This document shows, one piece after another, positions 14,834-55,152 of a stretch of 64,000 nt of DNA (positions within the stretch are counted from its first letter, which is position 1; each line of letters opens with the position of its first letter). The translations under genes were made by a program, and so were the position numbers. Where the stretch lies: IMG/VR virus record IMGVR_UViG_3300028862_000012, positions 62,001 through 126,000 of that record. The stretch is one strand, 5' to 3'. The notes under the pieces were generated by a model that worked only from the letters and a program-made list of their open reading frames with translations, did no database searches and had not been told where the DNA came from.

Positions 14834-15493
14834 ATGACAGTAAAAAAGTTTTTATTTATTTTGTTGTTTTCTTGTATTCCGATTGGTATTGGAATAAGCA
14901 GTATGTATCATGCTAATAGTATTACCTATAAAACAGGTGCAGTATGTAACTATCCTATGACTTATAAAGACTATTGTTTAGAAAAAATGTTTAAGAAAGG
15001 AATTCCTTCTGAAATTGACTTGTATGTATTAGATGTATGTATACAAGAAAAAGTAAATCCTTTTGAAATGCTATCTATATTAAATAACGAAAATCCTGAA
15101 CAAGACCCTTTTGTTGATAGTCCTAACTATGGATTTGAAAAGATATATAATAAAAAATTAAAAAAATATTATAAAGTAAAAACTCTTTTATCTACTGATT
15201 CTGGATTATTTCAACTAAACTCAAAACCTATGACTTATTTTATTGAAACCTTTTGGGTAAAGTGTAATGAAACAGAAACTTTTAATGTACATAATTATAA
15301 ACATAATACTCGTATGGCAGTTCGTATTTACAAGAGTTTAAGAAACTCAGTAGCTTTTAAAAATTCTGGATGGTATTATCCAGTCATGTGTTATAATGCA
15401 GGATATGGAAAAGTTATTAATAAAAAAGTTTCTAAAAAAACTTCTATTGACTATGTAAATAAGTTTAAAGAAAACATGAAAAAATATGAATAA
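14834..15493 (+). CDS. Lytic transglycosylase (SLT domain) with N-terminal hydrophobic anchor; candidate endolysin
   Basis: ILNNENP (catalytic Glu), DSGLFQLNS and YNAGYG are the SLT motifs. N-terminal KKFLFILLFSCIPIGIGI. Confidence 0.8.
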   Translation: MTVKKFLFILLFSCIPIGIGISSMYHANSITYKTGAVCNYPMTYKDYCLEKMFKKGIPSEIDLYVLDVCIQEKVNPFEMLSILNNENPEQDPFVDSPNYGFEKIYNKKLKKYYKVKTLLSTDSGLFQLNSKPMTYFIETFWVKCNETETFNVHNYKHNTRMAVRIYKSLRNSVAFKNSGWYYPVMCYNAGYGKVINKKVSKKTSIDYVNKFKENMKKYE

Positions 15494-15503
15494 CTTTAGA
15501 TAA

Positions 15504-15532
15504 TTGACATACTGTAAACTTTTCTCTATAAT
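15504..15532 (+). promoter_or_regulatory. sigma70-type promoter
   Basis: Perfect TTGACA-N17-TATAAT upstream of the clamp gene. Confidence 0.85.
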
Positions 15533-15566
15533 GACTTTAGTATAAAAATATACTAAAGGGAAATAT

Positions 15567-22410: not shown

Positions 22411-22995
22411 ATGAATACGATTATTATTGATATGGATTGTGTAACAAATGATTTTGTACCTTTCTTTTGTGAGATAGCCTATACAAAGTTTAAAATGAAC
22501 TTTGAAGGTGATGTGTATGCTAACTATAACCTAACTAGTTGTATGGTAGGTACAAACAATCAGAAGCAAAAAGTACTAGCTGATATATTCAGTATGCCTT
22601 ACTTTTGGCAAAATTTGCCTGTAATGAAAGATAGTTATGATACTTTAATGAAGTTATCTAATAAAGGTTATCAGCTAGACATTGCTTCAATGACTCCACC
22701 TAAAGCAGATATTAAAATTAAAGATATGGTTAAACGAGAAAAGTATAAGTGGCTTGATCGAGTATATCCTACTATAAATTTTAATCATATATATCTTGAT
22801 GTACCAAAGCATACTTTATGTGGAACTTATATTATAGATGATAATCCTGCTAATATTTATGGAGAGACCTACCATTTTAAAGGCGAATATATCAAGTATA
22901 ACTATAAGTACAATGAATCTGCTAGATCAGATTATTCAGTTTCTAATTGGAAGCAGATTGATAATTTATTTAAAGAAATAGAAGGTAGAAAATGA
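22411..22995 (+). CDS. 5'(3')-deoxyribonucleotidase (HAD, NT5C-like)
   Basis: IIIDMDCVTNDF (DxD motif), FWQNLPVM and IIDDNP. Confidence 0.85.
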   Translation: MNTIIIDMDCVTNDFVPFFCEIAYTKFKMNFEGDVYANYNLTSCMVGTNNQKQKVLADIFSMPYFWQNLPVMKDSYDTLMKLSNKGYQLDIASMTPPKADIKIKDMVKREKYKWLDRVYPTINFNHIYLDVPKHTLCGTYIIDDNPANIYGETYHFKGEYIKYNYKYNESARSDYSVSNWKQIDNLFKEIEGRK

Positions 22996-23585
22996 TATTA
23001 GCAATATCAGGCGGTCGCCATGCAGGTAAAGATACTTTTTTTGATACAATAAAAGAAAGATATAAGTATAACTATAATTTTATTCAAAAAAAGTTTAGTT
23101 ATAATATGAAACTTTGTGCTTGTATTATATTTGGCTGGACAATGGAACAAATAGAAGATCAAACTTTTAAGGAAACTATTGATCCTATATATGGTATAAG
23201 TCCCAGAATGTTTTTAGATGACTTTGGAACTATCTATGGTCGTCAGCATCTATGTGAAGTATTTCCAGAGTTTAAAAGATTAGTTGGTGAGCGTATTTGG
23301 TCAATGGGAACAATACGTGATTGTGTAAAAGAAGCCACAAATAATAATATTGTTTGCATAACTGACTTTCGATATCCTGTAGAAGAAGTTGAATTAGAAA
23401 GCTGTAATCATGAAGTTATAGTTCTAAATATAGATCGTCCAGAGTTTCCTATTAATCCAAAATCTGCTGATAAATTAGTTCCATTATTGGAATGGAATTA
23501 TAAACTGATAAATAATAAAAGCTTAGAAGAATATAGAGATGATTGTATTTCTATGTTTGATAAAATTATGGAAGATAGAAAGTAA
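22992..23585 (+). CDS. Deoxynucleoside monophosphate kinase
   Basis: ISGGRHAGKDT P-loop, SPRMFL...GT..GR, IWS and ITDFRYPVE, as in phage dNMP kinases. Confidence 0.85.
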   Translation: MILAISGGRHAGKDTFFDTIKERYKYNYNFIQKKFSYNMKLCACIIFGWTMEQIEDQTFKETIDPIYGISPRMFLDDFGTIYGRQHLCEVFPEFKRLVGERIWSMGTIRDCVKEATNNNIVCITDFRYPVEEVELESCNHEVIVLNIDRPEFPINPKSADKLVPLLEWNYKLINNKSLEEYRDDCISMFDKIMEDRK

Positions 23586-32012: not shown

Positions 32013-34214
32013 ATGATTAAAAAAGGACAAACATTAAAATTATCTTTAGCTACTTTATCAAGGCATAAAAAGCGATATGAGGTTTTAGGTTATAATATAA
32101 ATAAGATTAAGGAAGATAATCCTAATATCCCACTAAATGATATTTACTTAGATATTCCTGCTGAGTTCATACACTCTTCTGGATCTGATTTACCTTTATA
32201 TATGATTTGTGATTTTTGTAATCAGGAATATGAAACTACTTGGAGAAAATATACTAAACTACCGCAAGGGAAGGATGCATGTAATTCTTGTAAAGAATTA
32301 AAAAGAACAAATACTTGTATAGAAAAATATGGAGTAACTAATGTTTTTCAAGAGTTTTCTGTTAAAGAAAAAAGTAAAATAACTTGTTTAGAAAAATATG
32401 GTGTTGAACATGCTATTCAAAATAAAGAAATAATGAATAAAGCAGAAAATAATAAAAAAGTATCTAATAAGAAAAAATATGGTGTTGAGAGTGTATTTAG
32501 CTTATCTTCAGTACAACAAAAATCAAAAGAAACTAATTTAGAAAGATATGGATGTGAATATTCCTGTCAAAATAAAGATATAATAGCTAAAAGATGTCTT
32601 ACAGTAAAAGAAAAATATTCTGATCCTGTTGAGATTAAGAAGGTTTCAGACAAGTTAAAAAATACTATGATGAAAAGATATGGATATACTTCTGCTTTAA
32701 AAAATCCTGAAATATTAGCTAAGAAAACACAAACTATGTTTGATTTATATGGAGAAATAGGCTCTGAAGCAAGAAAAGAATTAGAAGAAAAACGAAAACA
32801 ATCGAATATAGAAAAATATGGTGTAGAGTATCTGCTTCAAAATAAAGAACTTGGAGAAAAAGCAAAGGTAAATAGAAAAGCTTATCTTATGAAAGAGTAT
32901 GGAGTAACTAATAATCTTATTATACCAGAAGTAAAAGAAAAAATAAAGCAAAAGAATATAGAAAAATATGGTGTAGACAGTCCTTTTAAGCTTCCTACTT
33001 TTCAAGAAAAGATTAGACAAATAAATATATTAAAATATGGCACTCCCTATCCTATGCAAAATTCAGAAGTGCGAAGAAAAGTATTTAAGCATAAAGGAAA
33101 GTCAGTACCTGAGTCTAAGTTTGAAGAGATGTTAAAAAATAGAGGCTTTATTTATAAATATGAACTTAATACAAATGGAAAATGCTTTGATTTTACTATT
33201 TATAATATAGATATGACAATAAATACAATTGTAGAAATTGATGGCGAATATAATCATGGACTAAAAAATGATTCAGATGGTTTTCATGTTCATGGAGAAA
33301 AAGATTGTGAACGATTTCAAAAAGTCCCAGATGGAGTTAAATATATAGTATGTAATTCCCTTAACATAGAAGAAGGTTTTTCACAGTTATGCTCAAACTT
33401 TGATGTCAATTATAGTGCTTGGATAAAAGAAATAATTGATGCATGTAATGTTGATTTTCCATATCCTGAATATTCTATTGAGCGTATGAAAAAAGAATAT
33501 AATAAATTAGCTGTTGCAGATTATAAACATAATTCATATGTAGGTCAGTCTATTATTAAGAATTTTCATAAATCAATTTATATTGCTCATGTATCTAATA
33601 AACCGTCCCCAGTTGAAGCTTGGAAGAATTCAGAGTTATTAAAAAAATGTATTGAAAATAGATTTATTTATGCAAACACACTAAGTTCTCAATCTATAGC
33701 TGATGGATTTAATGTTTGTAAAATAGCACCAAAAGTTTCTGTGTTTAGAGCTATTCTAGCGCGCGAGCTAATATTAAAATATTTAAATCAATATGACACA
33801 ATTTTTGATCCTTTTTCTGGATTTAGCGGTCGTATGTTAGGAACAACTTGTTTAAATAAAAAATATATTGGACAAGATATAAACAATACTTTTGTAAAAG
33901 AAAGTAATGAAATCATTAATTTTTTAAACTTAAATGCAAGTGTTTTAGAAAAAGATATTTTTGAAAGCTATGGAGAATATGACTGTTTATTTACTTGTTC
34001 TCCTTATAATTTAAAAGAAACATGGAATAACAGTAATCAAAAAAATCTAAGTTGCGATGAATGGATTGATATATGTTTATCTCATTTTAAATGTAAGTCA
34101 TATTTATTTGTAGTTGATGAAACTATTAAGTATAAAGATTACATTGTAGAGGAAATAAAAAATACAAGCCATTTTGGAAGAAATATAGAAAAAGTTATTC
34201 TTATAAGAAAATAA
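32013..34214 (+). CDS. Homing-endonuclease-like protein (Zn domain, EKYGV repeats, Vsr/DUF559-type PD-(D/E)xK nuclease) fused to a DNA amino-methyltransferase
   Basis: CDFC...CNSC, about 8 xxEKYGVx repeats, KSVPE...FDF...IVEIDGEYNHG nuclease, then IFDPFSGFSGRMLG (motif I) and LFTCSPY (motif IV variant). Confidence 0.75.
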   Translation: MIKKGQTLKLSLATLSRHKKRYEVLGYNINKIKEDNPNIPLNDIYLDIPAEFIHSSGSDLPLYMICDFCNQEYETTWRKYTKLPQGKDACNSCKELKRTNTCIEKYGVTNVFQEFSVKEKSKITCLEKYGVEHAIQNKEIMNKAENNKKVSNKKKYGVESVFSLSSVQQKSKETNLERYGCEYSCQNKDIIAKRCLTVKEKYSDPVEIKKVSDKLKNTMMKRYGYTSALKNPEILAKKTQTMFDLYGEIGSEARKELEEKRKQSNIEKYGVEYLLQNKELGEKAKVNRKAYLMKEYGVTNNLIIPEVKEKIKQKNIEKYGVDSPFKLPTFQEKIRQINILKYGTPYPMQNSEVRRKVFKHKGKSVPESKFEEMLKNRGFIYKYELNTNGKCFDFTIYNIDMTINTIVEIDGEYNHGLKNDSDGFHVHGEKDCERFQKVPDGVKYIVCNSLNIEEGFSQLCSNFDVNYSAWIKEIIDACNVDFPYPEYSIERMKKEYNKLAVADYKHNSYVGQSIIKNFHKSIYIAHVSNKPSPVEAWKNSELLKKCIENRFIYANTLSSQSIADGFNVCKIAPKVSVFRAILARELILKYLNQYDTIFDPFSGFSGRMLGTTCLNKKYIGQDINNTFVKESNEIINFLNLNASVLEKDIFESYGEYDCLFTCSPYNLKETWNNSNQKNLSCDEWIDICLSHFKCKSYLFVVDETIKYKDYIVEEIKNTSHFGRNIEKVILIRK

Positions 34215-38334: not shown

Positions 38335-38366
38335 AAGACCGTAGAGAAATCTACGGTCTTTTTTTT
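38335..38366 (+). terminator. Intrinsic terminator after MCP
   Basis: AAGACCGTAGA-GAAA-TCTACGGTCTT-TTTTT. Confidence 0.9.
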
Positions 38367-38370
38367 GTTA

Positions 38371-38399
38371 TTGACAACATTAGTAAATAAATATAGAAT
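38371..38399 (+). promoter_or_regulatory. sigma70-type promoter of the Hef-like endonuclease gene
   Basis: TTGACA-N17-TAGAAT. Confidence 0.75.
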
Positions 38400-38420
38400 A
38401 GTAAAAAAGGTATATAAAAA

Positions 38421-45863: not shown

Positions 45864-45885
45864 TAATTAAAAATTTTTTTTATAT

Positions 45886-45912
45886 AAAGCCAGTAGCAAT
45901 ACTGGCTTTTTT
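45886..45912 (+). terminator. Intrinsic terminator
   Basis: AAAGCCAGTA-GCAA-TACTGGCTTTTTT. Confidence 0.85.
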
Positions 45913-45921
45913 AATTACTAA

Positions 45922-45950
45922 TTGACAAAGATTTATGTTTATGCTATTTT
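45922..45950 (+). promoter_or_regulatory. sigma70-type promoter
   Basis: TTGACA-N17-TATTTT with an extended TGn. Confidence 0.55.
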
Positions 45951-47437: not shown

Positions 47438-47901
47438 ATTATATTCCTGAACAGGTAATATTAGGATTATTAGAAGTACCTAATGAAATTAGTTTGATTA
47501 TTCCTATTACTGGATGTAGTCTGCATTGTAATGGTTGTCATAGTCCTGAAATGCAAAATGAAAAAAATGGTGAAGAGCTTACTGAAGAAAAATTTATATC
47601 CTTATTATTTAATTATAAAAATAAAGCCTCTTGTATATGCTTTTTTAGTGGTGAGTTTAAAATATCTCATTTAATTACTAGAGCAAAGAATGAAGGATTT
47701 AAAACCGCTCTTTATTCAGGATTTACTAATATAAAGGATATTCCTTTTAATATATTACAAAATATAGATTATTTAAAATTAGGTGAATATAATGAATTAA
47801 AGGGTGGTCTTCAAGAAAAGACTACCAATCAAAGAATATACAAAATAGACAATGGCAACTATGAAGATATAACACAATTATTTTGGAGAAATAAATTATG
47901 A
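47434..47901 (+). CDS. nrdG: Anaerobic ribonucleotide reductase activating protein (radical SAM)
   Basis: GCSLHCNGCHS (CxxxCxxC), DYLKLGEY and TNQRIY. Adjacent to nrdD. Confidence 0.92.
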   Translation: MNYIPEQVILGLLEVPNEISLIIPITGCSLHCNGCHSPEMQNEKNGEELTEEKFISLLFNYKNKASCICFFSGEFKISHLITRAKNEGFKTALYSGFTNIKDIPFNILQNIDYLKLGEYNELKGGLQEKTTNQRIYKIDNGNYEDITQLFWRNKL

Positions 47902-50126
47902 TTAAATTATCACAAAAAGACTTAAAAGAAAAGAATGACTATGCAAAGAATTATATGAGTAACGGTAACGCCGCTTCTAAATCTGAAGTAGATCCTAATG
48001 CTAATGTAAGTACAAAAAGTGTTGCAACATTAGATAATGAAATGTTTAAGGATATTAAAGTTCAAGTTAATAGATATGCTTTAGGAGAAAAGATAGCAGA
48101 ATTATTTGGAGAAGAAACAAAAGCAGAGTATTATCGACAATTAGAGTCTCATGAAATTTATAGTCATGATGAATCAGCTACTTATTGTAAACCTTATTGC
48201 GTGGCAATAGATCTTTATCCCTTTATTAATAATGGTAATAAGATGATAGGTGGCTCAAGCAAAGCTCCAACTAATTTACAATCCTTTTGTGGTAGCTATG
48301 TTAATTTAATATTTTTAATTGCTTCACAATTTGCTGGTGCTGTGGCTGATGTTTCTTTTTTGACTTATTTTGATTATTTTGCTAGAAAAGATTTTGGAGA
48401 TGATTATTTAAAAACTCATACTAAGCAGATAGAGCGGTACTTTAAGCAGGTAATATATACCTTAAATGATCCTTCAGTTGGAAGGGGTAATCAAGCTGTA
48501 TTTTATAATACCTCAATTTTTGATGAAAATTATTTTAAAGGATTATTTTCAAATGTAATTTTTCCTGATTTTACTAATCCAAAATGGGAAACAGTAAAAG
48601 AGTTACAAGTATTTTTTATGCATTGGTTTAATAAAGAGCGAAACAGAGCTTTACTTACTTTTCCAGTTATGACTTTTGCGTACCAGACAGAAGCAGGTGA
48701 GTCAAAAGATTTAGAGTTTAAGAACTTTATGGCACAGGAAATGTCGGAAGGTAATAGTTTCTTTATTTATCATTCTGATGATATTGACAGTTTAAGTTCT
48801 TGCTGTTTTGATAAGAGTCAAGAAATCATGTTCAGAATTTCTGAAAATTCTGAAACTATTGAAATGAACTTTCAGGATGCCTATGAAAAGTATACTGATT
48901 CTATTTATATTTATTTTAATAATTATTGGAAAAAGGCTAAAGTAGTAAAAATCGATAGAAATAATAAAAAAATGTTTATGATAACTACTGAAGCTGAAAA
49001 AAAGATTATAGTTACCGAAGATCATTTAAATCCTACAGAGTTTGGAGATGTAGAAACAAAATTTTTGATGTTAAGTGATAAACTAAAAACAGATTCAGGA
49101 TATGAAGAAATTGTTTTAATAAAAGAGATTAATAATTACAAAGAAGATTACGTGTATTGTCTTGAAATGGAGGACAAAGAGAATCCTTACTTTACACTTC
49201 CTAATGGGATAATTACTCATAATTGTCGTTTACGCAATGCTATTGAAAAAGATGTATTTGCTTATACTTTAGGTGGTACTGGAATTTCTACAGGTTCAAA
49301 AAAAGTATTTACTTTAAATATAAATCGTATGGTTCAAGATAATCATAATGTAGTAGAAGAAGTTAAAAAATTACATAAATATCTTTTTGCCTATGATGCT
49401 ATTCTTCGAGAGATGCAAGCTAAAGGAATGTTACCTGTTTATGATGCTGGTTTTATTTCGTTAGACAAACAATATTTAACTATTGGAATTAATGGAGTAG
49501 TAGAAGCGGCTGAATTTTTGGGATATGAAATATCTAATAATAAAGAGTATAAAGATTGGCTTATTGGATTATTAAGTTCTATTAAAGATGCTAATAAACA
49601 AGCATCTGATGAGCTTTCTTTCTATTCTAATTATAAAATAGCAATAAATTCTGAATTTGTGCCAGCAGAAAATTTGGGAGCAAAGAATGCTCAATGGGAT
49701 AAAAAAGCAGGATATGTTGTACCTAGAGATTGCTATAATTCTTACCTTTATATTGTTGAGGATGATGCACTCGATTTCGTTGATAAGTTTTATCTACATG
49801 GAAAAGAAGTAACTCAATTTCTTGATGGTGGCAGTGCCTATCATATGAATATTAAGGAAATTCCTACAAAAGAAACTTGGTTAAAAATTATTGATATTGG
49901 AAATAAGTCTGGTTGTAATTATTGGACTTATAATTGTTTAACTACCTGTTGTGAAAATCCTGAATGTGGTTATATTGATAAAAATACAACACATAAATGT
50001 GCAAAGTGTGGATCAGAGGATATATCTTGGGCAACAAGAGTTATTGGATATTTAAAAAAAATTAAAAGTTTTAGTGAAGCTAGACAGGCAGAAGCAAGTC
50101 TTAGATATTTACATAAATTAAATTGA
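47898..50126 (+). CDS. nrdD: Class III (anaerobic) ribonucleotide reductase containing an intein
   Basis: IYSHDE, SSC|CRL active-site loop, EFVPAENLG, zinc CENPECG...CAKCG and glycyl-radical TRVIGY. Confidence 0.93.
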   Translation: MIKLSQKDLKEKNDYAKNYMSNGNAASKSEVDPNANVSTKSVATLDNEMFKDIKVQVNRYALGEKIAELFGEETKAEYYRQLESHEIYSHDESATYCKPYCVAIDLYPFINNGNKMIGGSSKAPTNLQSFCGSYVNLIFLIASQFAGAVADVSFLTYFDYFARKDFGDDYLKTHTKQIERYFKQVIYTLNDPSVGRGNQAVFYNTSIFDENYFKGLFSNVIFPDFTNPKWETVKELQVFFMHWFNKERNRALLTFPVMTFAYQTEAGESKDLEFKNFMAQEMSEGNSFFIYHSDDIDSLSSCCFDKSQEIMFRISENSETIEMNFQDAYEKYTDSIYIYFNNYWKKAKVVKIDRNNKKMFMITTEAEKKIIVTEDHLNPTEFGDVETKFLMLSDKLKTDSGYEEIVLIKEINNYKEDYVYCLEMEDKENPYFTLPNGIITHNCRLRNAIEKDVFAYTLGGTGISTGSKKVFTLNINRMVQDNHNVVEEVKKLHKYLFAYDAILREMQAKGMLPVYDAGFISLDKQYLTIGINGVVEAAEFLGYEISNNKEYKDWLIGLLSSIKDANKQASDELSFYSNYKIAINSEFVPAENLGAKNAQWDKKAGYVVPRDCYNSYLYIVEDDALDFVDKFYLHGKEVTQFLDGGSAYHMNIKEIPTKETWLKIIDIGNKSGCNYWTYNCLTTCCENPECGYIDKNTTHKCAKCGSEDISWATRVIGYLKKIKSFSEARQAEASLRYLHKLN
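48804..49223 (+). mobile_element. 140-aa mini-intein in NrdD
   Basis: Begins CFD (C1), block B VTEDH, block F DYVYCLEM, ends THN followed by Cys+1. Too short for a homing endonuclease. Confidence 0.92.
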
Positions 50127-50165: not shown

Positions 50166-50197
50166 AAGGACTAGCCTTAATTGGTTAGTCCTTTTTT
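50166..50197 (+). terminator. Intrinsic terminator
   Basis: AAGGACTAGCC-loop-GGTTAGTCCTTTTTT. Confidence 0.85.
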
Positions 50198-50230
50198 ATT
50201 TTCTAACTATTATAATGTGAGGAAATAAAA

Positions 50231-50593
50231 ATGGGTACTAAAATTAAAGAATTTTTAAAGAAATATGGTGCATATATAATAACTGGTTTAGTTGGATTTT
50301 TTTCAGCTATAATTTATGTATTTTTCTTATCTAAAGAAAAAAATACTAAGCAGGTAATAAATAATACTGTTTCTGTTGAAAAGGCAAAAGATGTTATTAG
50401 TAGTGCTGAAAAAGTTATAGCCGAAGCACCTAAAGTAATTGATGATGCAAAGGCTCAAGTTAAAGAATCAGATGAAATAAGCAAAGTATCTGAACAGAAA
50501 ATAACTACGATAGAAAAAACAGTTGAAACAATAGATAGTAATATTGCTAAAAGAAATGAACAGGAAAAAGACTTGTTCAAGGAAGTGAAATAA
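50231..50593 (+). CDS. Single-TM coiled-coil protein, i-spanin-like
   Basis: N-terminal TM (YIITGLVGFFSAIIYVFFL) followed by a long amphipathic helix. Preceded by TAACTATTA. Confidence 0.5.
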   Translation: MGTKIKEFLKKYGAYIITGLVGFFSAIIYVFFLSKEKNTKQVINNTVSVEKAKDVISSAEKVIAEAPKVIDDAKAQVKESDEISKVSEQKITTIEKTVETIDSNIAKRNEQEKDLFKEVK

Positions 50594-51117
50594 TGAAGAA
50601 AATATTTATATTACTATTTATACTTAGTAGTTTTTCTATATTTTCTCAATCAATAGATAATCTTATTATACCTTCAGATTACGCAACTTTAAAAGCAAAG
50701 TATATAGAACTTGCTACTATGTATATAGATACAAAGAAGGATTTAAATACTACCTTAGCAAGTTTAAAAGATACAAAAGATCAATTAAAAATTGCTATTA
50801 CAAATAGTGATGAGTCTAATAAAACAATAACTACTATTATTGAAAAATATAATGAAAGTATTGGTTCAAATACTGATTTAGTAAAGTCTAGTAATGAACT
50901 TATAGAGCAATTAGAAAAATCTACAAAAATTATAAAATCAAATACCTATGACTTTTTTAGATTTGGTGTAGGAATGGAATACAGCTATAGTATTGCAGAT
51001 AATATAAATAAGTATTCTATATCTGGAAGTTGTTTAGTTGCTAATAAATTTTTTATATCAACAAAAGTATCTTATCCTATTGAAATTGGAATAGGTGCCG
51101 GATTTTATATTAATTAA
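50593..51117 (+). CDS. Secreted coiled-coil protein with four C-terminal amphipathic beta strands (outer-membrane anchor-like)
   Basis: Signal peptide MKKIFILLFILSSFSIFS, a coiled coil, then FRFGVGMEYSY / YSISGSCLV / FFISTKVSY / IGIGAGFYIN. Confidence 0.5.
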   Translation: MKKIFILLFILSSFSIFSQSIDNLIIPSDYATLKAKYIELATMYIDTKKDLNTTLASLKDTKDQLKIAITNSDESNKTITTIIEKYNESIGSNTDLVKSSNELIEQLEKSTKIIKSNTYDFFRFGVGMEYSYSIADNINKYSISGSCLVANKFFISTKVSYPIEIGIGAGFYIN

Positions 51118-51144: not shown

Positions 51145-52014
51145 TTGAAGTATGCAAAAACAAATCTTTCAGATTCAGAAAGAATATCAAATTCTAATTA
51201 TTACAAACAAGATACCAATGTAAGAAACTATCGAAATATTATTTATTACATAGAAATAGAGCTAGAGAAGTATTTAGCAAAGCTTTTAACAAAAAATCAA
51301 TTAGATAGAATTATCTGGTCAAGTTCTGATTTTGCATTGCGTAAGCGTGGAGGTAATGCACAAGAGGATGTAACAAATACTTTGGATCTTCCTTTTGTTA
51401 GCTACAAATTAACAGATGTAAATACAGATACACAGCGTCAATTATTTAACAACTATATGAATGTTAATGGCGTTTACTTATCAGATGCAGAAGTAATGGT
51501 AAAGACTGCACCAATGCATTTAGAGTATGAAGTAGTATTTTGGTGTAATCGAGATGAAGAGCTTGTGTATGCTACTCATAATTTTTTATTTGATATGAGT
51601 AATGAAACTTTAATTCATCCAAGTATTCCTTTAGAAACAGGTAAAAGTATAGTACTTCCTGCCTTTATTTCTTTTTCTGGAAGTTATAATGATGTATATA
51701 GTCAGTCTGATTATATAATTAGCAACAAAATTCGCACATTGTCTATGACTTTCTCTATAGATACTTATATTTTAAAAGAAGTAGGAAATACTTTAAATTC
51801 TGAAGGAATAGGCTCATTTGGTAGCATTAATATTCCATTAGTTAAAACAGTTATATTTGATTTTTTTAATAGTAAAAATATTAATACAGAAGCAATAAAA
51901 AATGGAGATATAAATATATATGATTCAGAAATGGAAATACTTTTGCGAGATTATTTTTCTGATGATGAAGAAATATTTCAAGAATTAAAGCCACCTGTAG
52001 TTGCTCCTACTTAA
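51145..52014 (+). CDS. Tail terminator / sheath stabiliser (gp15-like)
   Basis: LPFVSYKLTD...TAPMHLEYEVVFW...TLSMTFSIDTYI. Directly upstream of the sheath gene. Confidence 0.65.
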   Translation: MKYAKTNLSDSERISNSNYYKQDTNVRNYRNIIYYIEIELEKYLAKLLTKNQLDRIIWSSSDFALRKRGGNAQEDVTNTLDLPFVSYKLTDVNTDTQRQLFNNYMNVNGVYLSDAEVMVKTAPMHLEYEVVFWCNRDEELVYATHNFLFDMSNETLIHPSIPLETGKSIVLPAFISFSGSYNDVYSQSDYIISNKIRTLSMTFSIDTYILKEVGNTLNSEGIGSFGSINIPLVKTVIFDFFNSKNINTEAIKNGDINIYDSEMEILLRDYFSDDEEIFQELKPPVVAPT

Positions 52015-52089: not shown

Positions 52090-53907
52090 ATGGATAATTG
52101 GAGAATTCAAACTTTTTTTGAGGATAAATCAACAGTTGTAAAACCGACTACTTCTGCATTGGGTTTTACTGTTATAAAAGCCCCAAAGGGTACAGACTAT
52201 ATGTATTTTGATGTAGGACAAGCAGGATCAATTATTGATTGCTGTGGTTATCCTGCTTACAGTAACGGTGTTCAGGATGCAATAGACTATAATAAAAAAG
52301 CTCCATTATATGTAAATGCACCTTCTACTAATGGAAAATTTGGTGGTGTATTTGTAACAAAGACAGGTACTATCCCTTTTTATTCAGGTTATAGTAGTTG
52401 GGATACTTTTGATTTAAAGCTTATTCCTCAAAGCATGAATGCAGGTACAGGTGATGCTTCTAAAGTATTGTTTAATGTTACTTTAACTAATTTTGCTAAG
52501 TACAATGCAAGAAGTTTAACAATTTCTATAAACGGAACTCCTGATACTTTAGTATTTGATACTTCTGTTGCAGGAATTGAAACTATTACTGGTAGTCTTT
52601 GCACTGCTGTATTAACTAAATCAACGGGTGCTTTAGCAATTACATTTACTACTGCTCCTGCAATACTTGCTGTAGTGACTGTTGATTATACAATAAATAT
52701 TAATGATGATTGTTATTTTGTTTTAAGAAATTATAGTAAGTGTGTAGATGATATTGCTGTAAAAGTTTTAGGAAAGACTAATGGATTATTTAGTATTGCT
52801 GTTTATAAGAAAGATAAAAATAATGATTTTTCTGAAATAACAAACTCTCCTTTTGAAGTTTCCTTAAATCCTAAAGGAACAAATGCTAACGGTAAAAATA
52901 TCTATGTAGAGAATGTTTTCAAAGAAAGTAAATATCTTAAAGCACTTGATACTGAAACTGCATTTAGTACTTTTGCAGATGATACTGCTTTAGTAAATCT
53001 TGCTGGTGGTTCTCGTGGAGATACGGTAACAAATGCGGTAATTGCATCTTCTTATCTAGCTCTTACTGATAAAAATAAATATCCTGTTAAAGTTTTCTTT
53101 GATGGAAATGCAGACGCTACAATTGCTACGGCTTTTGAAACGCTACGCAATGGTATATTTAATCGTTCTCGTTTTATACTGACTACTCCTGATAGTACAG
53201 AAACTGAATTGATTTCAGGTGCGGCAACTTCGCGTTATAATTTAAGTAATCGTGGTATTTATGTTTATTGTTTAACTTGGGGAACACATGTAGATAGTTA
53301 TTATGGCAATGATTTTAATTGTTCAAATGTTGGTTTAATTGCAGGTCGTCATGCAGATAGTATAAATAAAAAACATGGTGGTATTGGCCCTATGTGGTAC
53401 GATGAAAATGAAGTTGGTGGACAACTAGGCTCTGCAATTACTAGCTTAAATCAAAGTGTTACTGAAATTAATTCTAAAGCATTAGATACACTAAGACTTA
53501 ATCCTGTTAAATGGGATATATCTGCTGGAGCGATGATAGTATCAGACAGAACAACCTTAATTACTGATGGTGACTACAGTTATATTGGCCCTTCTGGTTT
53601 AGCTGACTATATAGCTTTTAATATAGAAAAATTAGTATTACCTAACCAGCTTGGAAAGCTGAATGATATGTTCCATCGTAATAGTGTTAAGGCAAACGCA
53701 GAAACAATATTAAAAACTGTTTCTGATTTACTGTATGACTATTATGTAAAGTGTGATGAGGAAAATAATAATAGTGAAATACTTAATGCTAAAAAGTTTG
53801 TATTAACTGTAGGTGTTCAGTATACTCCACAATCTGAAATGATAGATTTTATATTTATCAATAGTTCAATTGGTGTTGATATAAAAGAAGTAGTTAACAA
53901 AGGATAA
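52090..53907 (+). CDS. Tail sheath protein (gp18-like)
   Basis: 605 aa. C-terminal LRLNPV...GAMIVSDRT, LGKLND...R and YVKCDEENNNSEI...FVLTVGVQYT. Confidence 0.9.
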   Translation: MDNWRIQTFFEDKSTVVKPTTSALGFTVIKAPKGTDYMYFDVGQAGSIIDCCGYPAYSNGVQDAIDYNKKAPLYVNAPSTNGKFGGVFVTKTGTIPFYSGYSSWDTFDLKLIPQSMNAGTGDASKVLFNVTLTNFAKYNARSLTISINGTPDTLVFDTSVAGIETITGSLCTAVLTKSTGALAITFTTAPAILAVVTVDYTININDDCYFVLRNYSKCVDDIAVKVLGKTNGLFSIAVYKKDKNNDFSEITNSPFEVSLNPKGTNANGKNIYVENVFKESKYLKALDTETAFSTFADDTALVNLAGGSRGDTVTNAVIASSYLALTDKNKYPVKVFFDGNADATIATAFETLRNGIFNRSRFILTTPDSTETELISGAATSRYNLSNRGIYVYCLTWGTHVDSYYGNDFNCSNVGLIAGRHADSINKKHGGIGPMWYDENEVGGQLGSAITSLNQSVTEINSKALDTLRLNPVKWDISAGAMIVSDRTTLITDGDYSYIGPSGLADYIAFNIEKLVLPNQLGKLNDMFHRNSVKANAETILKTVSDLLYDYYVKCDEENNNSEILNAKKFVLTVGVQYTPQSEMIDFIFINSSIGVDIKEVVNKG

Positions 53908-53913
53908 TAGAGT

Positions 53914-54429
53914 ATGAGTTTAGAATTAGAGAGTTTGCTTTTAACAGGTGAGGATGCATTAAGTAATCATTTTATGGTTACTATCCCTGCCTTTCTTGGT
54001 GCCAATGAATCAATTTTAAGTTTAAACTTACGAGTACTTACTATATCAAATGTAGGCCGTGAGTTATCTACTTATGAAATAACTAAACGAGGTCGTAAGT
54101 CTACTCGTCCCGGTGGAATTGATGATACTGCAAAGGAATTTACTTTTACTTTTAGACCTGATAAAAAATTACGTACTTACAATAGTTTAATAGCATGGAC
54201 TAATGTAATTAAGCATGAACAATTAGGAACAATGGTAGTCGATCCTTTATATCGCGTTATTATTACTGTAACTCCTGTGGATACTGCAAATATTCCTTTA
54301 GGTGGCCCTACTTATTATGAAGGATGTTGGCCTAGTTCTATAGATGGAATAGAATATGATGAAGAAAACGGTGATCCTTTAAACGTTAGTGTCACTATGC
54401 AATACACTAATCGTATTGCTCCTGTTTAA
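53914..54429 (+). CDS. Tail tube protein (gp19-like)
   Basis: 171 aa after the sheath. FTFTFRPD...W...YEGCWPSSIDGIEYD...VSVTMQY. Confidence 0.85.
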   Translation: MSLELESLLLTGEDALSNHFMVTIPAFLGANESILSLNLRVLTISNVGRELSTYEITKRGRKSTRPGGIDDTAKEFTFTFRPDKKLRTYNSLIAWTNVIKHEQLGTMVVDPLYRVIITVTPVDTANIPLGGPTYYEGCWPSSIDGIEYDEENGDPLNVSVTMQYTNRIAPV

Positions 54430-54476: not shown

Positions 54477-55100
54477 ATGATAAAGTTAAATAGTTCAGAT
54501 ATACCCTTATTAGATGATTATCTAAAAAGCTATAATTTTCAATTAGATAATTTATACTATTTTGTAATTGAAGGCAATAGTAAAGATGATTTAAAATCAA
54601 TAGATTTTTTTGCTAAATCTCACTCTATTCCTATGGATACTTTAGAAGTTGAATCTTTTCCTTTTGGGAAAAAGTTTTATAAAGGTTATACACAGGTAGA
54701 AGATTTTGAAATAACTTTTTTACTACCTGATGCCTATACTACAGGCTCCGAAAATCCATTGATTTATTTTACTGAATGGTTAAATATTATTTATGATTAT
54801 AAAAATAAATGTTTTAAGGTGTTAGAGTCTGAAGAAGACAAATATAGAAATGCAAGACTAACACTACTTACTTACGATTACGATGTAAACTCACAAATGA
54901 GTACTGCTGAAGTTTTTATAGGCTCTGGTTTTTCAAAATCTTTTGAAATAGTATTACAGAATTTGATGCCTTTAGGATTTGATAATATTGAGGTAGATGA
55001 TGAAACAGGTGATCCTATGCAAGTGACTATGAAGTTTGCTTGTGAAGGTGTTACTTTATACTCTCCTTATGGAGAGGTTTTAAAGCCATCTGGACTTTAG
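54477..55100 (+). CDS. Tube-fold baseplate/tube-cap protein (gp48/gp54-like)
   Basis: FEITFL...FTEW...LMPLGFDNIEVDDETGDPMQVTMKF is paralogous to the tube C-terminus (YDEENGDPLNVSVTM). Confidence 0.65.
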   Translation: MIKLNSSDIPLLDDYLKSYNFQLDNLYYFVIEGNSKDDLKSIDFFAKSHSIPMDTLEVESFPFGKKFYKGYTQVEDFEITFLLPDAYTTGSENPLIYFTEWLNIIYDYKNKCFKVLESEEDKYRNARLTLLTYDYDVNSQMSTAEVFIGSGFSKSFEIVLQNLMPLGFDNIEVDDETGDPMQVTMKFACEGVTLYSPYGEVLKPSGL

Positions 55101-55103
55101 TAA

Positions 55104-55132
55104 TTGACATAAAATCTAAAATAAGATATATT
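55104..55132 (+). promoter_or_regulatory. sigma70-type promoter
   Basis: TTGACA-N17-TATATT upstream of the dUTPase gene. Confidence 0.7.
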
Positions 55133-55152
55133 TCTGTACAAAGGATTTTTAT

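What the first reader, a model, noticed from the sequence alone, without database searches (positions are those of the whole stretch)
50231..51117. Candidate non-canonical spanin pair: inner-membrane coiled coil plus a beta-strand-anchored outer-membrane partner
Seen: two overlapping late genes. The first is a TM + coiled-coil protein (i-spanin-like). The second has a cleavable-looking signal peptide with no lipobox Cys, a ~100-aa coiled coil and four amphipathic beta strands ending GAGFYIN, like a trimeric-autotransporter anchor. Known: o-spanins are lipoproteins, and u-spanins are single proteins with a lipoylated N-terminus and a C-terminal TM. Inference: outer-membrane disruption may use an integral beta-barrel partner. 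Alternatively the second gene is a superinfection-exclusion or surface protein.
Basis: partly seen in the sequence, partly recalled or inferred. Interest (0 to 1): 0.6.

Follow-up and report, generated by a model that had tools for sequence, protein, structure and literature searches.

The report
Phage envelope-spanning pair with beta-barrel anchor
An uncultured giant phage from peat carries two coupled late genes, for an inner-membrane coiled-coil protein and for an exported coiled-coil protein with an autotransporter-like outer-membrane anchor instead of a lipid anchor; they may be a new kind of cell-bursting "spanin", but no test here shows what they do.

Summary
p1 (50231-50593) has an N-terminal membrane helix and a charged helical domain. 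p2 (50593-51117, TAATG overlap) has a signal peptide without a lipobox Cys, about 90 helical residues and four C-terminal beta strands. The strands are modelled at pLDDT 84-90, and the best PDB matches are trimeric-autotransporter anchors (weak E-values).

Neither protein matches a curated family. p2 belongs to a small phage-only family. In 7 of 9 loci a p1-like gene sits directly upstream, mostly overlapping.

In sister phages the same genomic slot holds one longer gene: N-terminal membrane helix, charged helix, then mature p2 (hhalign 98.8%). These loci have no p1-like gene upstream. This pattern argues that the coiled coil lies in the periplasm between the two membranes.

The pair shares a phage promoter motif with the tail genes and with the holin-endolysin operon. 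No canonical spanin was found in the 224-kb genome.

Best reading: a spanin-like system anchored by a beta barrel, in two-gene and one-gene forms (confidence 0.4). No evidence shows lysis function, p1-p2 binding or barrel assembly, and the host is unknown. Phage-encoded true autotransporter anchors exist and coexist with ordinary spanins, so a surface-protein role stays open.

The parts
50166..50193 (+). Terminator-like hairpin (11 pairs plus a T run) that closes the upstream nrdH-nrdG-nrdD operon
   Evidence: 1 found against 0.4 expected from shuffles; sequence
50204..50216 (+). Phage-specific promoter-like motif TAACTATTATAAT, 27 nt before the p1 start codon
   Evidence: The 9-nt core TAACTAT[TC]A occurs 64 times in the 224-kb genome, mostly 13-60 nt upstream of genes on the same strand. 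These include the sheath gene (52034), the second tube gene (54464) and the holin-endolysin operon (G000 49113, - strand).
50231..50593 (+). p1: 120-aa predicted type II inner-membrane protein. It has a short K-rich N-terminus, a membrane helix and a charged helical domain of about 85 residues.
   Evidence: Family alignment A2 has 6 members of 95-120 aa. There is no significant Pfam or PHROG hit.
50264..50332 (+). p1 hydrophobic membrane segment, residues 12-34 (YGAYIITGLVGFFSAIIYVFFLS)
   Evidence: uninterrupted hydrophobic core of 23 residues, against 9-16 in the p2-type signal peptides
50540..50578 (+). p1 conserved C-terminal motif NIAKRNEQEKDLF; R108 is the only invariant residue of the family
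50593..51117 (+). p2: 174-aa exported protein made of a signal peptide, a coiled-coil stalk and a 4-strand C-terminal beta anchor
50593..50646 (+). p2 signal peptide, residues 1-18. The likely signal peptidase I site is IFS|QS. There is no lipobox Cys.
   Evidence: Sequence. Family members have matching sites IYA|Q, VFS|E, LHA|F, LVA|E and LKA|D. The cleavage site was read by eye, because no signal-peptide predictor was available.
50662..50742 (+). p2 conserved tip at the N-terminus of the mature protein (LIIPSDYATLKAKYIELATMYIDTKKD). P27, L33, Y44 and D50 are invariant in A1.
   Evidence: In the one-gene forms the same motif is KIIYKDGKLIIPEDYEELK.
50680..50940 (+). p2 helical stalk, residues 30-116 (helices 30-70 and 77-116)
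   Evidence: pLDDT only 50-68 in this part; heptad score
50956..51114 (+). p2 beta anchor, residues 122-174: four amphipathic strands. The motif GIGAGFYI fits the pattern x-G-x-x-hydrophobic-x-hydrophobic and is followed by an extra Asn. G170 is invariant.
   Evidence: (pLDDT 84-90)
51145..52014 (+). Conserved 289-aa gene (TTG start) directly downstream, with no terminator in between. It precedes the sheath gene. It served as the synteny anchor for finding sister loci.
   Evidence: There is no family hit; a role in the tail is only inferred from its position.

Best explanation

Proposed steps:
1. Both genes are made late from one promoter with coupled translation.
2. p1 sits in the inner membrane with its N-terminus inside and holds a charged helix of about 85 residues in the periplasm.
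3. p2 is exported by Sec and its signal peptide is cut off.
4. The BAM machinery inserts p2 into the outer membrane through its C-terminal beta signal. Several copies, most likely three with four strands each, form a small barrel like a trimeric-autotransporter anchor.
5. The p2 stalk of about 90 residues stays in the periplasm. Its conserved N-terminal tip (IPxDYxxLKxxY) meets the conserved C-terminal tip of p1.
6. After the holin and the amidase endolysin, encoded elsewhere in the genome, remove the cell wall, the bridges can move and collapse, and they disrupt the outer membrane.
7. Sister phages do the same with one chain that carries both anchors, the mirror image of the phage T1 unimolecular spanin.

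Shown here: the gene arrangement, the family conservation, the predicted secondary structure, the fold resemblance and the shared promoter motif.

Inferred only: membrane topology, barrel assembly, p1-p2 contact and any role in lysis.
For: 1. Anatomy: the features are as described.
2. Anchor: the beta domain resembles trimeric-autotransporter anchors. It ends in a beta-signal-like motif; the terminal residue is F in P0005, P0006 and P0008.
3. Pairing: a TM-plus-charged-helix gene lies directly upstream of the signal-peptide form of p2 in 7 of 9 distinct loci. The start and stop overlap (TAATG or ATGA) in five of them, and the gap is 2 to 19 nt in two.
4. One-gene forms: these are 186-222 aa, 13 sequences in A5 (12 protein clusters from the word search plus L023). 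They occupy the same slot between the gene of about 340 aa and the conserved gene that precedes the sheath. Their last ~120 residues are homologous to mature p2 (hhalign 98.8%, E 1.4e-16). Instead of a signal peptide they have a hydrophobic segment, mostly 19-21 residues, plus a charged helix of 55-85 residues. None of 5 such loci has a TM gene upstream. The contrast of 7/9 with 0/5 gives one-sided Fisher p = 0.0105; the loci are not phylogenetically independent. A chain anchored at its N-terminus in the inner membrane cannot export its stalk to the cell surface.
5. Length: the ~85 helical residues of p1 and the ~87 of p2 would reach about 25 nm if both were fully extended (my estimate at 0.15 nm per residue). 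That is of the order of the periplasm's width.
6. Regulation: the same promoter motif drives p1-p2, the tail genes and the holin-endolysin operon.
7. Missing canonical spanin: the genome has a 4-TM holin candidate and an Amidase_2 endolysin. It has no lipoprotein with a neighbouring type II membrane partner, apart from a pair that also occurs in a Clostridium phage. It also has no lipoprotein with a C-terminal TM.
8. Literature: Kongari et al. 2018 (PMC6139136, section 15) found about 13% of phages without a spanin and wrote that 'an OMP could act as an o-spanin'.
Against: - There is no functional or expression data.
- The p1-p2 co-fold gave no verdict.
- No trimer was modelled, so neither the barrel nor the direction of the stalk has been seen.
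- The pair never lies next to lysis genes. It travels with the tail module or with nrdD.
- Homology between p1 and the N-terminal part of the one-gene forms is not established. hhalign aligns only a 9-residue N-terminal motif at 35% probability.
- Two loci with the signal-peptide form lack a p1-like gene upstream (L006, L031).
- Known two-component spanins nearly all have periplasmic Cys residues (PMC6139136). p1 has none, and the single Cys of p2 is not conserved.
- In solved autotransporter anchors the helix runs through the barrel and the N-terminal part lies outside the cell. The Gly residues on one face of the last strand would fit a helix-filled lumen.
- Genuine YadA-anchor proteins in lytic phages coexist with ordinary spanins, as in phiEco32.
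- Two near-complete related giant phages (92% and 100% complete) lack p2.
- The host is unknown, so an outer membrane is itself an inference.
Confidence: 0.4

Rival explanations
1. p2 is a miniature trimeric autotransporter (type Vc secretion). After the barrel forms, the coiled coil passes through it and is displayed on the cell surface. There it would mask a receptor, block superinfection, keep progeny from sticking to debris, or clump cells. p1 would be an inner-membrane helper for its assembly, or an unrelated small membrane protein.
For: - The best structural matches are autotransporter anchors, whose N-terminal parts are exported.
- BFVD matches at E below 0.001 include phage proteins named as YadA-like anchor proteins, from Proteus, Salmonella, Yersinia, Erwinia and Escherichia phages.
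- phiEco32 phi32_119 is a true YadA_anchor protein (E 2.1e-21). It has a signal peptide and collagen-like repeats. It lies far from that phage's Rz-like spanin.
- Papers list such genes in N4-like, T4-like and phiEco32-like phages (PMC10654107, PMC3728262).
- Gly residues line one face of the last p2 strand.
- Helper genes next to autotransporter genes are known: SadB (my own knowledge) and TpgA (named in the title of entry 9vnj).
Against: - The one-gene forms keep an uncleaved-looking N-terminal membrane helix, which would hold the stalk in the periplasm.
- There is no sequence match to Pfam YadA_anchor, even at E up to 10, and none by hhalign to the phiEco32 anchor.
- The 'passenger' would be only about 100 residues with no head domain, and its most conserved part is the tip.
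- The promoter is shared with late structural and lysis genes, whereas phi32_119 sits among small genes in what looks like an early region.
Confidence: 0.2
2. The pair, or the single chain, does bridge the two membranes but does not serve lysis. It might hold the envelope together during a long infection, sense or block incoming phage DNA (exclusion or lysis inhibition), or serve as a membrane site for tail assembly.
For: - The same topology evidence applies as for the best explanation.
- Synteny with the tail module is constant: the gene of about 340 aa, then the pair or the one-gene form, then the conserved gene, then sheath and tube.
- The pair is never next to a holin or endolysin.
- It is absent from related giant phages, which suggests an accessory gene.
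Against: - No known phage system of this kind exists to compare with.
- In L008 the pair follows nrdD and is not next to tail genes. In the window it has its own terminator and promoter boundary on the upstream side.
- T4-type phages scatter their lysis genes, so position says little (PMC6139136).
- Exclusion genes are usually early (my own knowledge).
Confidence: 0.25
3. p2 is not an outer-membrane protein. Its C-terminal strands form a soluble trimerisation knot, like the foldon of T4 fibritin, in a secreted or virion-associated coiled-coil protein. Alternatively, the host has no outer membrane.
For: - A coiled coil followed by a C-terminal beta element is also the fibritin layout (my own knowledge).
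- The genes lie beside tail genes.
- The host is unknown: the source is a peat metagenome.
- The fold-search E-values against the PDB are weak.
Against: - Signal peptides or membrane helices are conserved in all family members, which is unusual for virion proteins.
- The strands are 8-12 residues long, alternate hydrophobic with small residues, and end in a beta-signal-like motif.
- Matches to autotransporter anchors rank first in both the PDB and BFVD.
- The endolysin is a single-domain 199-aa amidase without a wall-binding module. That is typical of phages of two-membrane hosts (my own knowledge).
Confidence: 0.1

Closest known systems
Two-component spanins (lambda Rz/Rz1; T4 PseT.3/PseT.2)
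   Same: - The first gene encodes a small type II inner-membrane protein with a helical periplasmic domain. p1 is 120 aa; T4 PseT.3 is 117 aa (PMC6139136).
- The second gene is coupled to it and encodes an exported partner bound for the outer membrane.
- As in T4, the genes are not in a lysis cassette.
- There is no detectable sequence similarity, which is also usual between different spanin families.
   Different: - The outer partner has no lipobox Cys and is not a lipoprotein.
- It is longer (156 mature residues, against 40 for Rz1), helical, and carries a membrane-spanning beta anchor.
- It has no conserved periplasmic Cys.
- Its function is untested.
Unimolecular spanin (phage T1 gp11)
   Same: The one-gene forms in sister phages (L023, L030, L032, P0009-P0020) are single chains predicted to be anchored in both membranes.
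   Different: The polarity is reversed. gp11 has an N-terminal lipid anchor in the outer membrane and a C-terminal inner-membrane helix. Here the N-terminal helix is in the inner membrane and the C-terminal beta anchor is in the outer membrane. The periplasmic part is helical here, whereas gp11's is mainly beta (PMC6139136).
Trimeric autotransporter anchors (YadA, Hia, AtaA), including phage-encoded ones such as phiEco32 phi32_119 and the prophage Eib proteins
   Same: A signal peptide, a coiled coil and a four-strand C-terminal anchor. These anchors are the best structural matches. The Gly-x-Gly-x-aromatic ending recalls ...LGAGVSYEW of phi32_119.
   Different: - There is no sequence-level match.
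- There is no head or neck domain.
- The final residue is N or L in many family members.
- A membrane partner gene or an N-terminal membrane helix is present, which argues that the stalk is not exported.
- That the Eib genes are prophage-borne is my own knowledge.
OmpM / SlpA-type outer-membrane tethers of two-membrane Firmicutes and Deinococcus (my own knowledge, not tested here)
   Same: A periplasmic coiled-coil stalk followed by a C-terminal outer-membrane beta barrel. This is a precedent for a stalk that stays in the periplasm.
   Different: Those proteins have an N-terminal SLH domain that binds the cell wall and a large barrel built by each chain. p2 has no SLH match and only four strands per chain.

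Membership tests
Two-component spanin (i-spanin plus o-spanin) | i-spanin: type II inner-membrane protein with an N-terminal membrane helix and a helical periplasmic domain | tested here: met
   p1 residues 12-34 are hydrophobic and the rest is a charged helix. This is a prediction only, and the positive-inside rule is ambiguous for p1.
Two-component spanin (i-spanin plus o-spanin) | o-spanin: outer-membrane lipoprotein with a lipobox and a lipoylated Cys | tested here: not met
   No Cys follows the signal peptide in p2 or in any family member.
Two-component spanin (i-spanin plus o-spanin) | The two genes are adjacent, overlapping or embedded | tested here: met
   TAATG overlap in the window. 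Overlap or a gap of at most 19 nt in 7 of 9 loci.
Two-component spanin (i-spanin plus o-spanin) | The two subunits bind each other through their periplasmic ends | tested here: inconclusive
   Complex prediction gave no verdict: score 0.54 against a control at 0.41. Conserved tips and the one-gene forms are indirect support.
Two-component spanin (i-spanin plus o-spanin) | Required for outer-membrane disruption in lysis (spherical cells when absent) | not testable with these tools
   The phage is uncultured and comes from a peat metagenome.
Unimolecular spanin | One chain with an N-terminal lipobox and a C-terminal membrane helix | tested here: not met
   No predicted lipoprotein of the genome has a C-terminal TM. 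The one-gene relatives have the opposite polarity.
Trimeric autotransporter adhesin (type Vc) | Sequence match to the YadA_anchor domain (PF03895) | tested here: not met
   There is no hit at E up to 10 for any of the 7 members. hhalign against the phiEco32 anchor finds nothing.
Trimeric autotransporter adhesin (type Vc) | Four C-terminal strands per chain, preceded by a helix, that form a 12-strand trimeric barrel | tested here: inconclusive
   The monomer model has a helix plus four strands at pLDDT 84-90, and anchor chains rank first in the fold searches. No trimer was modelled.
Trimeric autotransporter adhesin (type Vc) | N-terminal passenger exported to the cell surface | not testable with these tools
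   The N-terminal membrane helix of the one-gene forms argues against it indirectly.
OmpM/SlpA-type tether | N-terminal SLH domain that binds the cell wall | tested here: not met
   No SLH or other Pfam hit.

The most novel reading that the evidence does not exclude
This family would define a third architectural class of phage outer-membrane disruption proteins. The outer anchor would be a small oligomeric beta barrel inserted by BAM, not a lipid. The class would exist in two forms: a two-gene form (p1 plus p2) and a one-chain form with reversed polarity relative to T1 gp11. It would account for some phages now counted as lacking a spanin, and it would realise the 'OMP as o-spanin' possibility raised in PMC6139136.
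Probability: 0.35. Interest if true: 0.8.

Novelty: new variant of a known kind. Interest (0 to 1): 0.6.

Why it matters
About one phage in eight that infects two-membrane bacteria has no recognisable spanin (PMC6139136). Besides spanins, the only other route seen in the papers searched here is the cationic peptide gp28 of phage phiKT (bioRxiv 10.1101/515445, abstract listed).

A spanin whose outer half is an integral beta-barrel protein would widen the rules that annotation pipelines use, since they now require a lipobox. It would also show that anchoring in both membranes, not lipid attachment, is the essential feature. Having a two-gene form and a one-gene form side by side would give a natural experiment on how such systems evolve.

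If the stalk is instead displayed on the cell surface, the family would be the smallest autotransporter-like proteins known. It would add to the unexplained presence of such anchors in lytic phages.

Tried and rejected
- Family and sequence searches: Pfam, PHROG and PDB-sequence scans of p1, p2 and the whole family gave only coiled-coil noise. tblastn of p2 against 50,697 phage records found nothing. The word search found only p2 itself.
- Single-sequence AlphaFold2 of p2 was useless (pLDDT 41.6).
- Complex prediction on p2 19-117 with p1 36-120 gave no verdict: score 0.54 against a control at 0.41. It counts neither for nor against binding.
- p1 against the N-terminal part of the one-gene forms: hhalign aligned 2 columns in one test and 9 columns at 35% probability in the other, so homology is not shown.
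- I tested whether the p1 C-terminus matches the strand before the IPEDY motif in the one-gene forms, as a split hairpin would. The score was no better than shuffled sequences (z 0.58). Rejected.
- A rival 'true spanin' was considered: a TM protein plus a lipoprotein at G000 191349-192207. Its lipoprotein family, phrog_24725, is also present, with a small gene just upstream (not translated here), in Clostridium phage phi3626, whose host has no outer membrane, and in a Synechococcus phage. Rejected.
- The other five predicted lipoproteins have no type II membrane-protein neighbour.
- Scans of the whole genome with three Rz-like spanin PHROGs gave only weak hits. Two of them fell on p1 and p2 themselves. 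For those two PHROGs the same scan also matches in 13-14 of 14 control genomes, archaea included, so the hits are not specific.
- No endolysin was found in the sister contigs. They are only 8-18% complete.
- Five related giant-phage records have no p2 homologue. A lipoprotein scan of one complete relative, G004, did not settle whether it has a canonical spanin.
- The DUF6808 lead from the ESM Atlas led nowhere.
- Close-relative scans of IMG/VR with P0006, P0007 and P0008 found nothing.
- No RNA run holds the locus.
Full report
**Setting**

The window is bases 62001-126000 of a 223,865-bp IMG/VR virus record. CheckV puts it at 91% complete, and its G+C is 29%. The only sequencing run that holds the locus is a peat metagenome, and no RNA run was found.

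The phage is a very distant T4-type myovirus. Its sheath (52090-53907) is 22-24% identical to known sheaths, and it has two tube paralogues. No host could be assigned.

**Observation**

p1 (50231-50593, 120 aa) and p2 (50593-51117, 174 aa) are real ORFs whose stop and start share a base (TAATG).

p1 has a K-rich N-terminus and a 23-residue hydrophobic segment (residues 12-34). A charged helical domain of about 85 residues follows.

p2 begins with a classical signal peptide (MKKIFILLFILSSFSIFS|QS) and has no lipobox Cys.

Folded alone it gives a poor model. With its family alignment, AlphaFold2 places helices at 30-70 and 77-116. It places four strands at 122-133, 138-149, 153-161 and 164-171, at pLDDT 84-90.

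The top four Foldseek matches in the PDB are all trimeric-autotransporter anchors: AtaA, and three Hia constructs. E-values are 0.013-0.13. VIA-align gives Hia 1022-1098 Z 5.5 and rmsd 2.2 A over 52 residues.

In the viral library BFVD, five matches reach E below 0.001. The matches include phage proteins named as YadA-like anchor proteins.

The scores are weak singly but agree.

**No curated family**

Pfam, PHROGs and PDB sequences give only coiled-coil noise. YadA_anchor does not match at E up to 10. hhalign against the genuine anchor of phiEco32 finds nothing. The likeness to autotransporter anchors is one of predicted fold, not of sequence.

**The p2 family and its partner**

An exhaustive phmmer search of 1.84 billion representatives found six relatives of 143-168 aa. 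They share four features:
- a signal peptide;
- the motif IPEDYxTLKxxYIE right after the cleavage site;
- a coiled coil;
- a C-terminal YPxxxxIGxGxxF. This fits the pattern x-G-x-x-hydrophobic-x-hydrophobic that I take as the usual outer-membrane beta signal (my own knowledge). Three members end in F, and three carry one extra Asn.

In five of their six contigs a gene of 95-111 aa for a membrane helix plus a charged helix lies directly upstream, mostly overlapping. These p1 relatives share a C-terminal motif with one invariant Arg.

In L008 the signal peptide of the p2 relative is in another frame because of a one-base difference in an ATATAT run. I left it as it is.

**Sister loci found by synteny**

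I used the conserved gene downstream of p2 (51145-52014) as bait and fetched 19 IMG/VR loci.
- L020 and L021 carry the two-gene form.
- L031 has p2 without p1 upstream.
- L023, L030 and L032 carry one longer gene in the same slot.

A profile word search then found 12 more clusters of this long form, 186-222 aa. Their last ~120 residues are homologous to mature p2 (hhalign 98.8%, E 1.4e-16).

In place of the signal peptide they have a K-rich N-terminus and a hydrophobic segment, mostly 19-21 residues. It ends in aromatic residues and has no small-residue cleavage region. A charged helix of 55-85 residues follows, which is the layout of p1.

None of five long-form loci has a membrane-protein gene upstream, against 7 of 9 loci with the signal-peptide form. 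One-sided Fisher p is 0.0105, but the loci are related, so this overstates independence.

Homology between p1 and the N-terminal part of the long forms is not shown. The argument rests on architecture and position.

**What this implies**

If the long forms keep their N-terminal helix, one chain is fixed in the inner membrane at one end and carries an outer-membrane-type beta anchor at the other. The coiled coil must then lie in the periplasm.

By extension, the p2 stalk would be periplasmic, and p1 would supply the inner-membrane half in trans. If fully extended, the two helical domains would reach about 25 nm (my estimate). The conserved parts are the tips that would meet.

**Link to lysis**

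The genome has a holin-endolysin pair far from the window, at G000 48047-49083 on the - strand. It consists of a 145-aa four-helix membrane protein and a 199-aa Amidase_2 enzyme (phrog_9611, E 9.5e-45). Nothing spanin-like lies beside it.

The 9-nt core of the motif TAACTATTATAAT occurs 64 times in the genome. The full motif lies 27 nt before p1, just after a terminator-like hairpin that closes the nrdD operon. It also precedes the sheath and tube genes, and close variants precede baseplate-region genes and the holin-endolysin operon. p1-p2 therefore appears to belong to the same expression class as the virion and lysis genes.

No canonical spanin was found:
- Of six predicted lipoproteins, only one has a membrane-protein neighbour.
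- That pair also occurs in Clostridium phage phi3626, whose host has no outer membrane.
- No lipoprotein has a C-terminal membrane helix.
- Scans with the Rz-like PHROGs give only non-specific hits.

**Against the spanin reading**

- Nothing here shows function.
- The co-fold of p1 and p2 gave no verdict.
- No trimer was modelled.
- The pair never neighbours lysis genes.
- Conserved periplasmic Cys residues, typical of spanins (PMC6139136), are lacking.
- In solved autotransporter anchors the helix runs through the barrel and the rest of the protein is outside the cell.
- Real YadA-anchor proteins are found in lytic phages.
- In phiEco32 the anchor protein phi32_119 has a signal peptide and collagen-like repeats and ends ...GVSYEW. 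It sits among small genes far from that phage's Rz-like spanin. Autotransporter-like phage proteins as a class are therefore not spanins.
- Two near-complete related giant phages lack p2.

**Verdict**

The best-supported mechanism is a spanin-like bridge across the envelope whose outer anchor is a small oligomeric beta barrel, present in two-gene and one-gene forms (confidence 0.4). Kongari et al. named this possibility ('an OMP could act as an o-spanin', PMC6139136), and I found no report of one in the papers searched.

The rivals are:
- a surface-displayed mini-autotransporter (0.2);
- a bridge with a role other than lysis (0.25);
- no outer-membrane anchoring at all (0.1).

It fails the membership test for canonical spanins (no lipoprotein) and for autotransporters (no sequence match). 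I therefore file it as a new variant of a known kind of system, resting on an uncharacterised protein family.

Noticed in passing
window 48804-49223 (inside nrdD, 47898-50126): The anaerobic ribonucleotide reductase gene carries a 140-aa mini-intein-like insert. It starts CFDKSQ... and ends ...IITHN, followed by C. It splits the motif SSC|CRLRN. Pfam matches NRDD in two stretches and gives a partial Intein_splicing hit (E 2.5e-5, below the curated cut-off).
   Followed up: partly
window 50204, 52034 and 54464; G000 genome-wide: The 9-nt core of a phage-specific promoter-like motif, TAACTATTATAAT, occurs 64 times. In about ten cases the ATG starts 13 nt after the motif start (TAACTATTATAATATG), which suggests leaderless mRNAs; the second tube gene at 54477 is one example.
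   Followed up: partly
window about 15490-15566, 38340-38420, 45870-45950, 55100-55152: A second class of upstream regions looks like canonical sigma-70 promoters (TTGACA, 17 nt, TATAAT). This suggests the host uses ordinary sigma-70 signals, not the Bacteroidota type. I saw this by eye in the upstream sequences and did not test it statistically.
   Followed up: no
G000:C1:191349-192207 (- strand; L003 5350-6208): A 110-aa membrane protein plus a 174-aa lipoprotein (phrog_24725, E 8.7e-35). The lipoprotein family, with a small gene just upstream (not translated here), also occurs in Clostridium phage phi3626 (gp44/gp45) and in Synechococcus phage S-SRM01. The function is unknown, and it is probably not a spanin.
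   Followed up: partly
G000:C1:48047-49083 (- strand; L012 1444-2480): Lysis cassette outside the window: a 145-aa protein with four hydrophobic segments (holin candidate, no PHROG hit) overlaps the start of a 199-aa single-domain Amidase_2 endolysin.
   Followed up: partly
window 53914-54429 and 54477-55100: Two adjacent tail-tube paralogues, both matching phrog_45 (E 6e-11 and 7.6e-9). The second is apparently leaderless.
   Followed up: no
L047 6286-7494 and L048 6285-7493: In a sister phage an IS605 OrfB / Cas12f-like TnpB gene lies just after the sheath gene; in L048 the tube gene follows it. The same contigs carry a KwaA-like (Kiwa defence) membrane protein gene at 1210-1851, three genes upstream of the one-gene form.
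   Followed up: no
L008 1759-1830: The p2 relative here has its signal peptide (MKKIISLTILLLFSILYAQ...) in a different frame from the mature part, with the shift in an ATATAT run. This may be an assembly error or a real frameshift. I left it unrepaired.
   Followed up: partly
L051 3219-4016 (phiEco32 phi32_119): RefSeq calls this gene a 'tail protein'. It has a signal peptide, collagen-like GxY repeats and a strong YadA_anchor match (E 2.1e-21). It is a phage-encoded trimeric autotransporter of unknown role.
   Followed up: partly
G000: 22819-23166, 32171-32506, 33370-33639, 158789-159124, 212185-212625: Five further predicted lipoproteins of 89-146 aa; two of them, like the 191349-191873 lipoprotein listed above, have the lipobox LFTSC. 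They are scattered among small genes of unknown function.
   Followed up: partly
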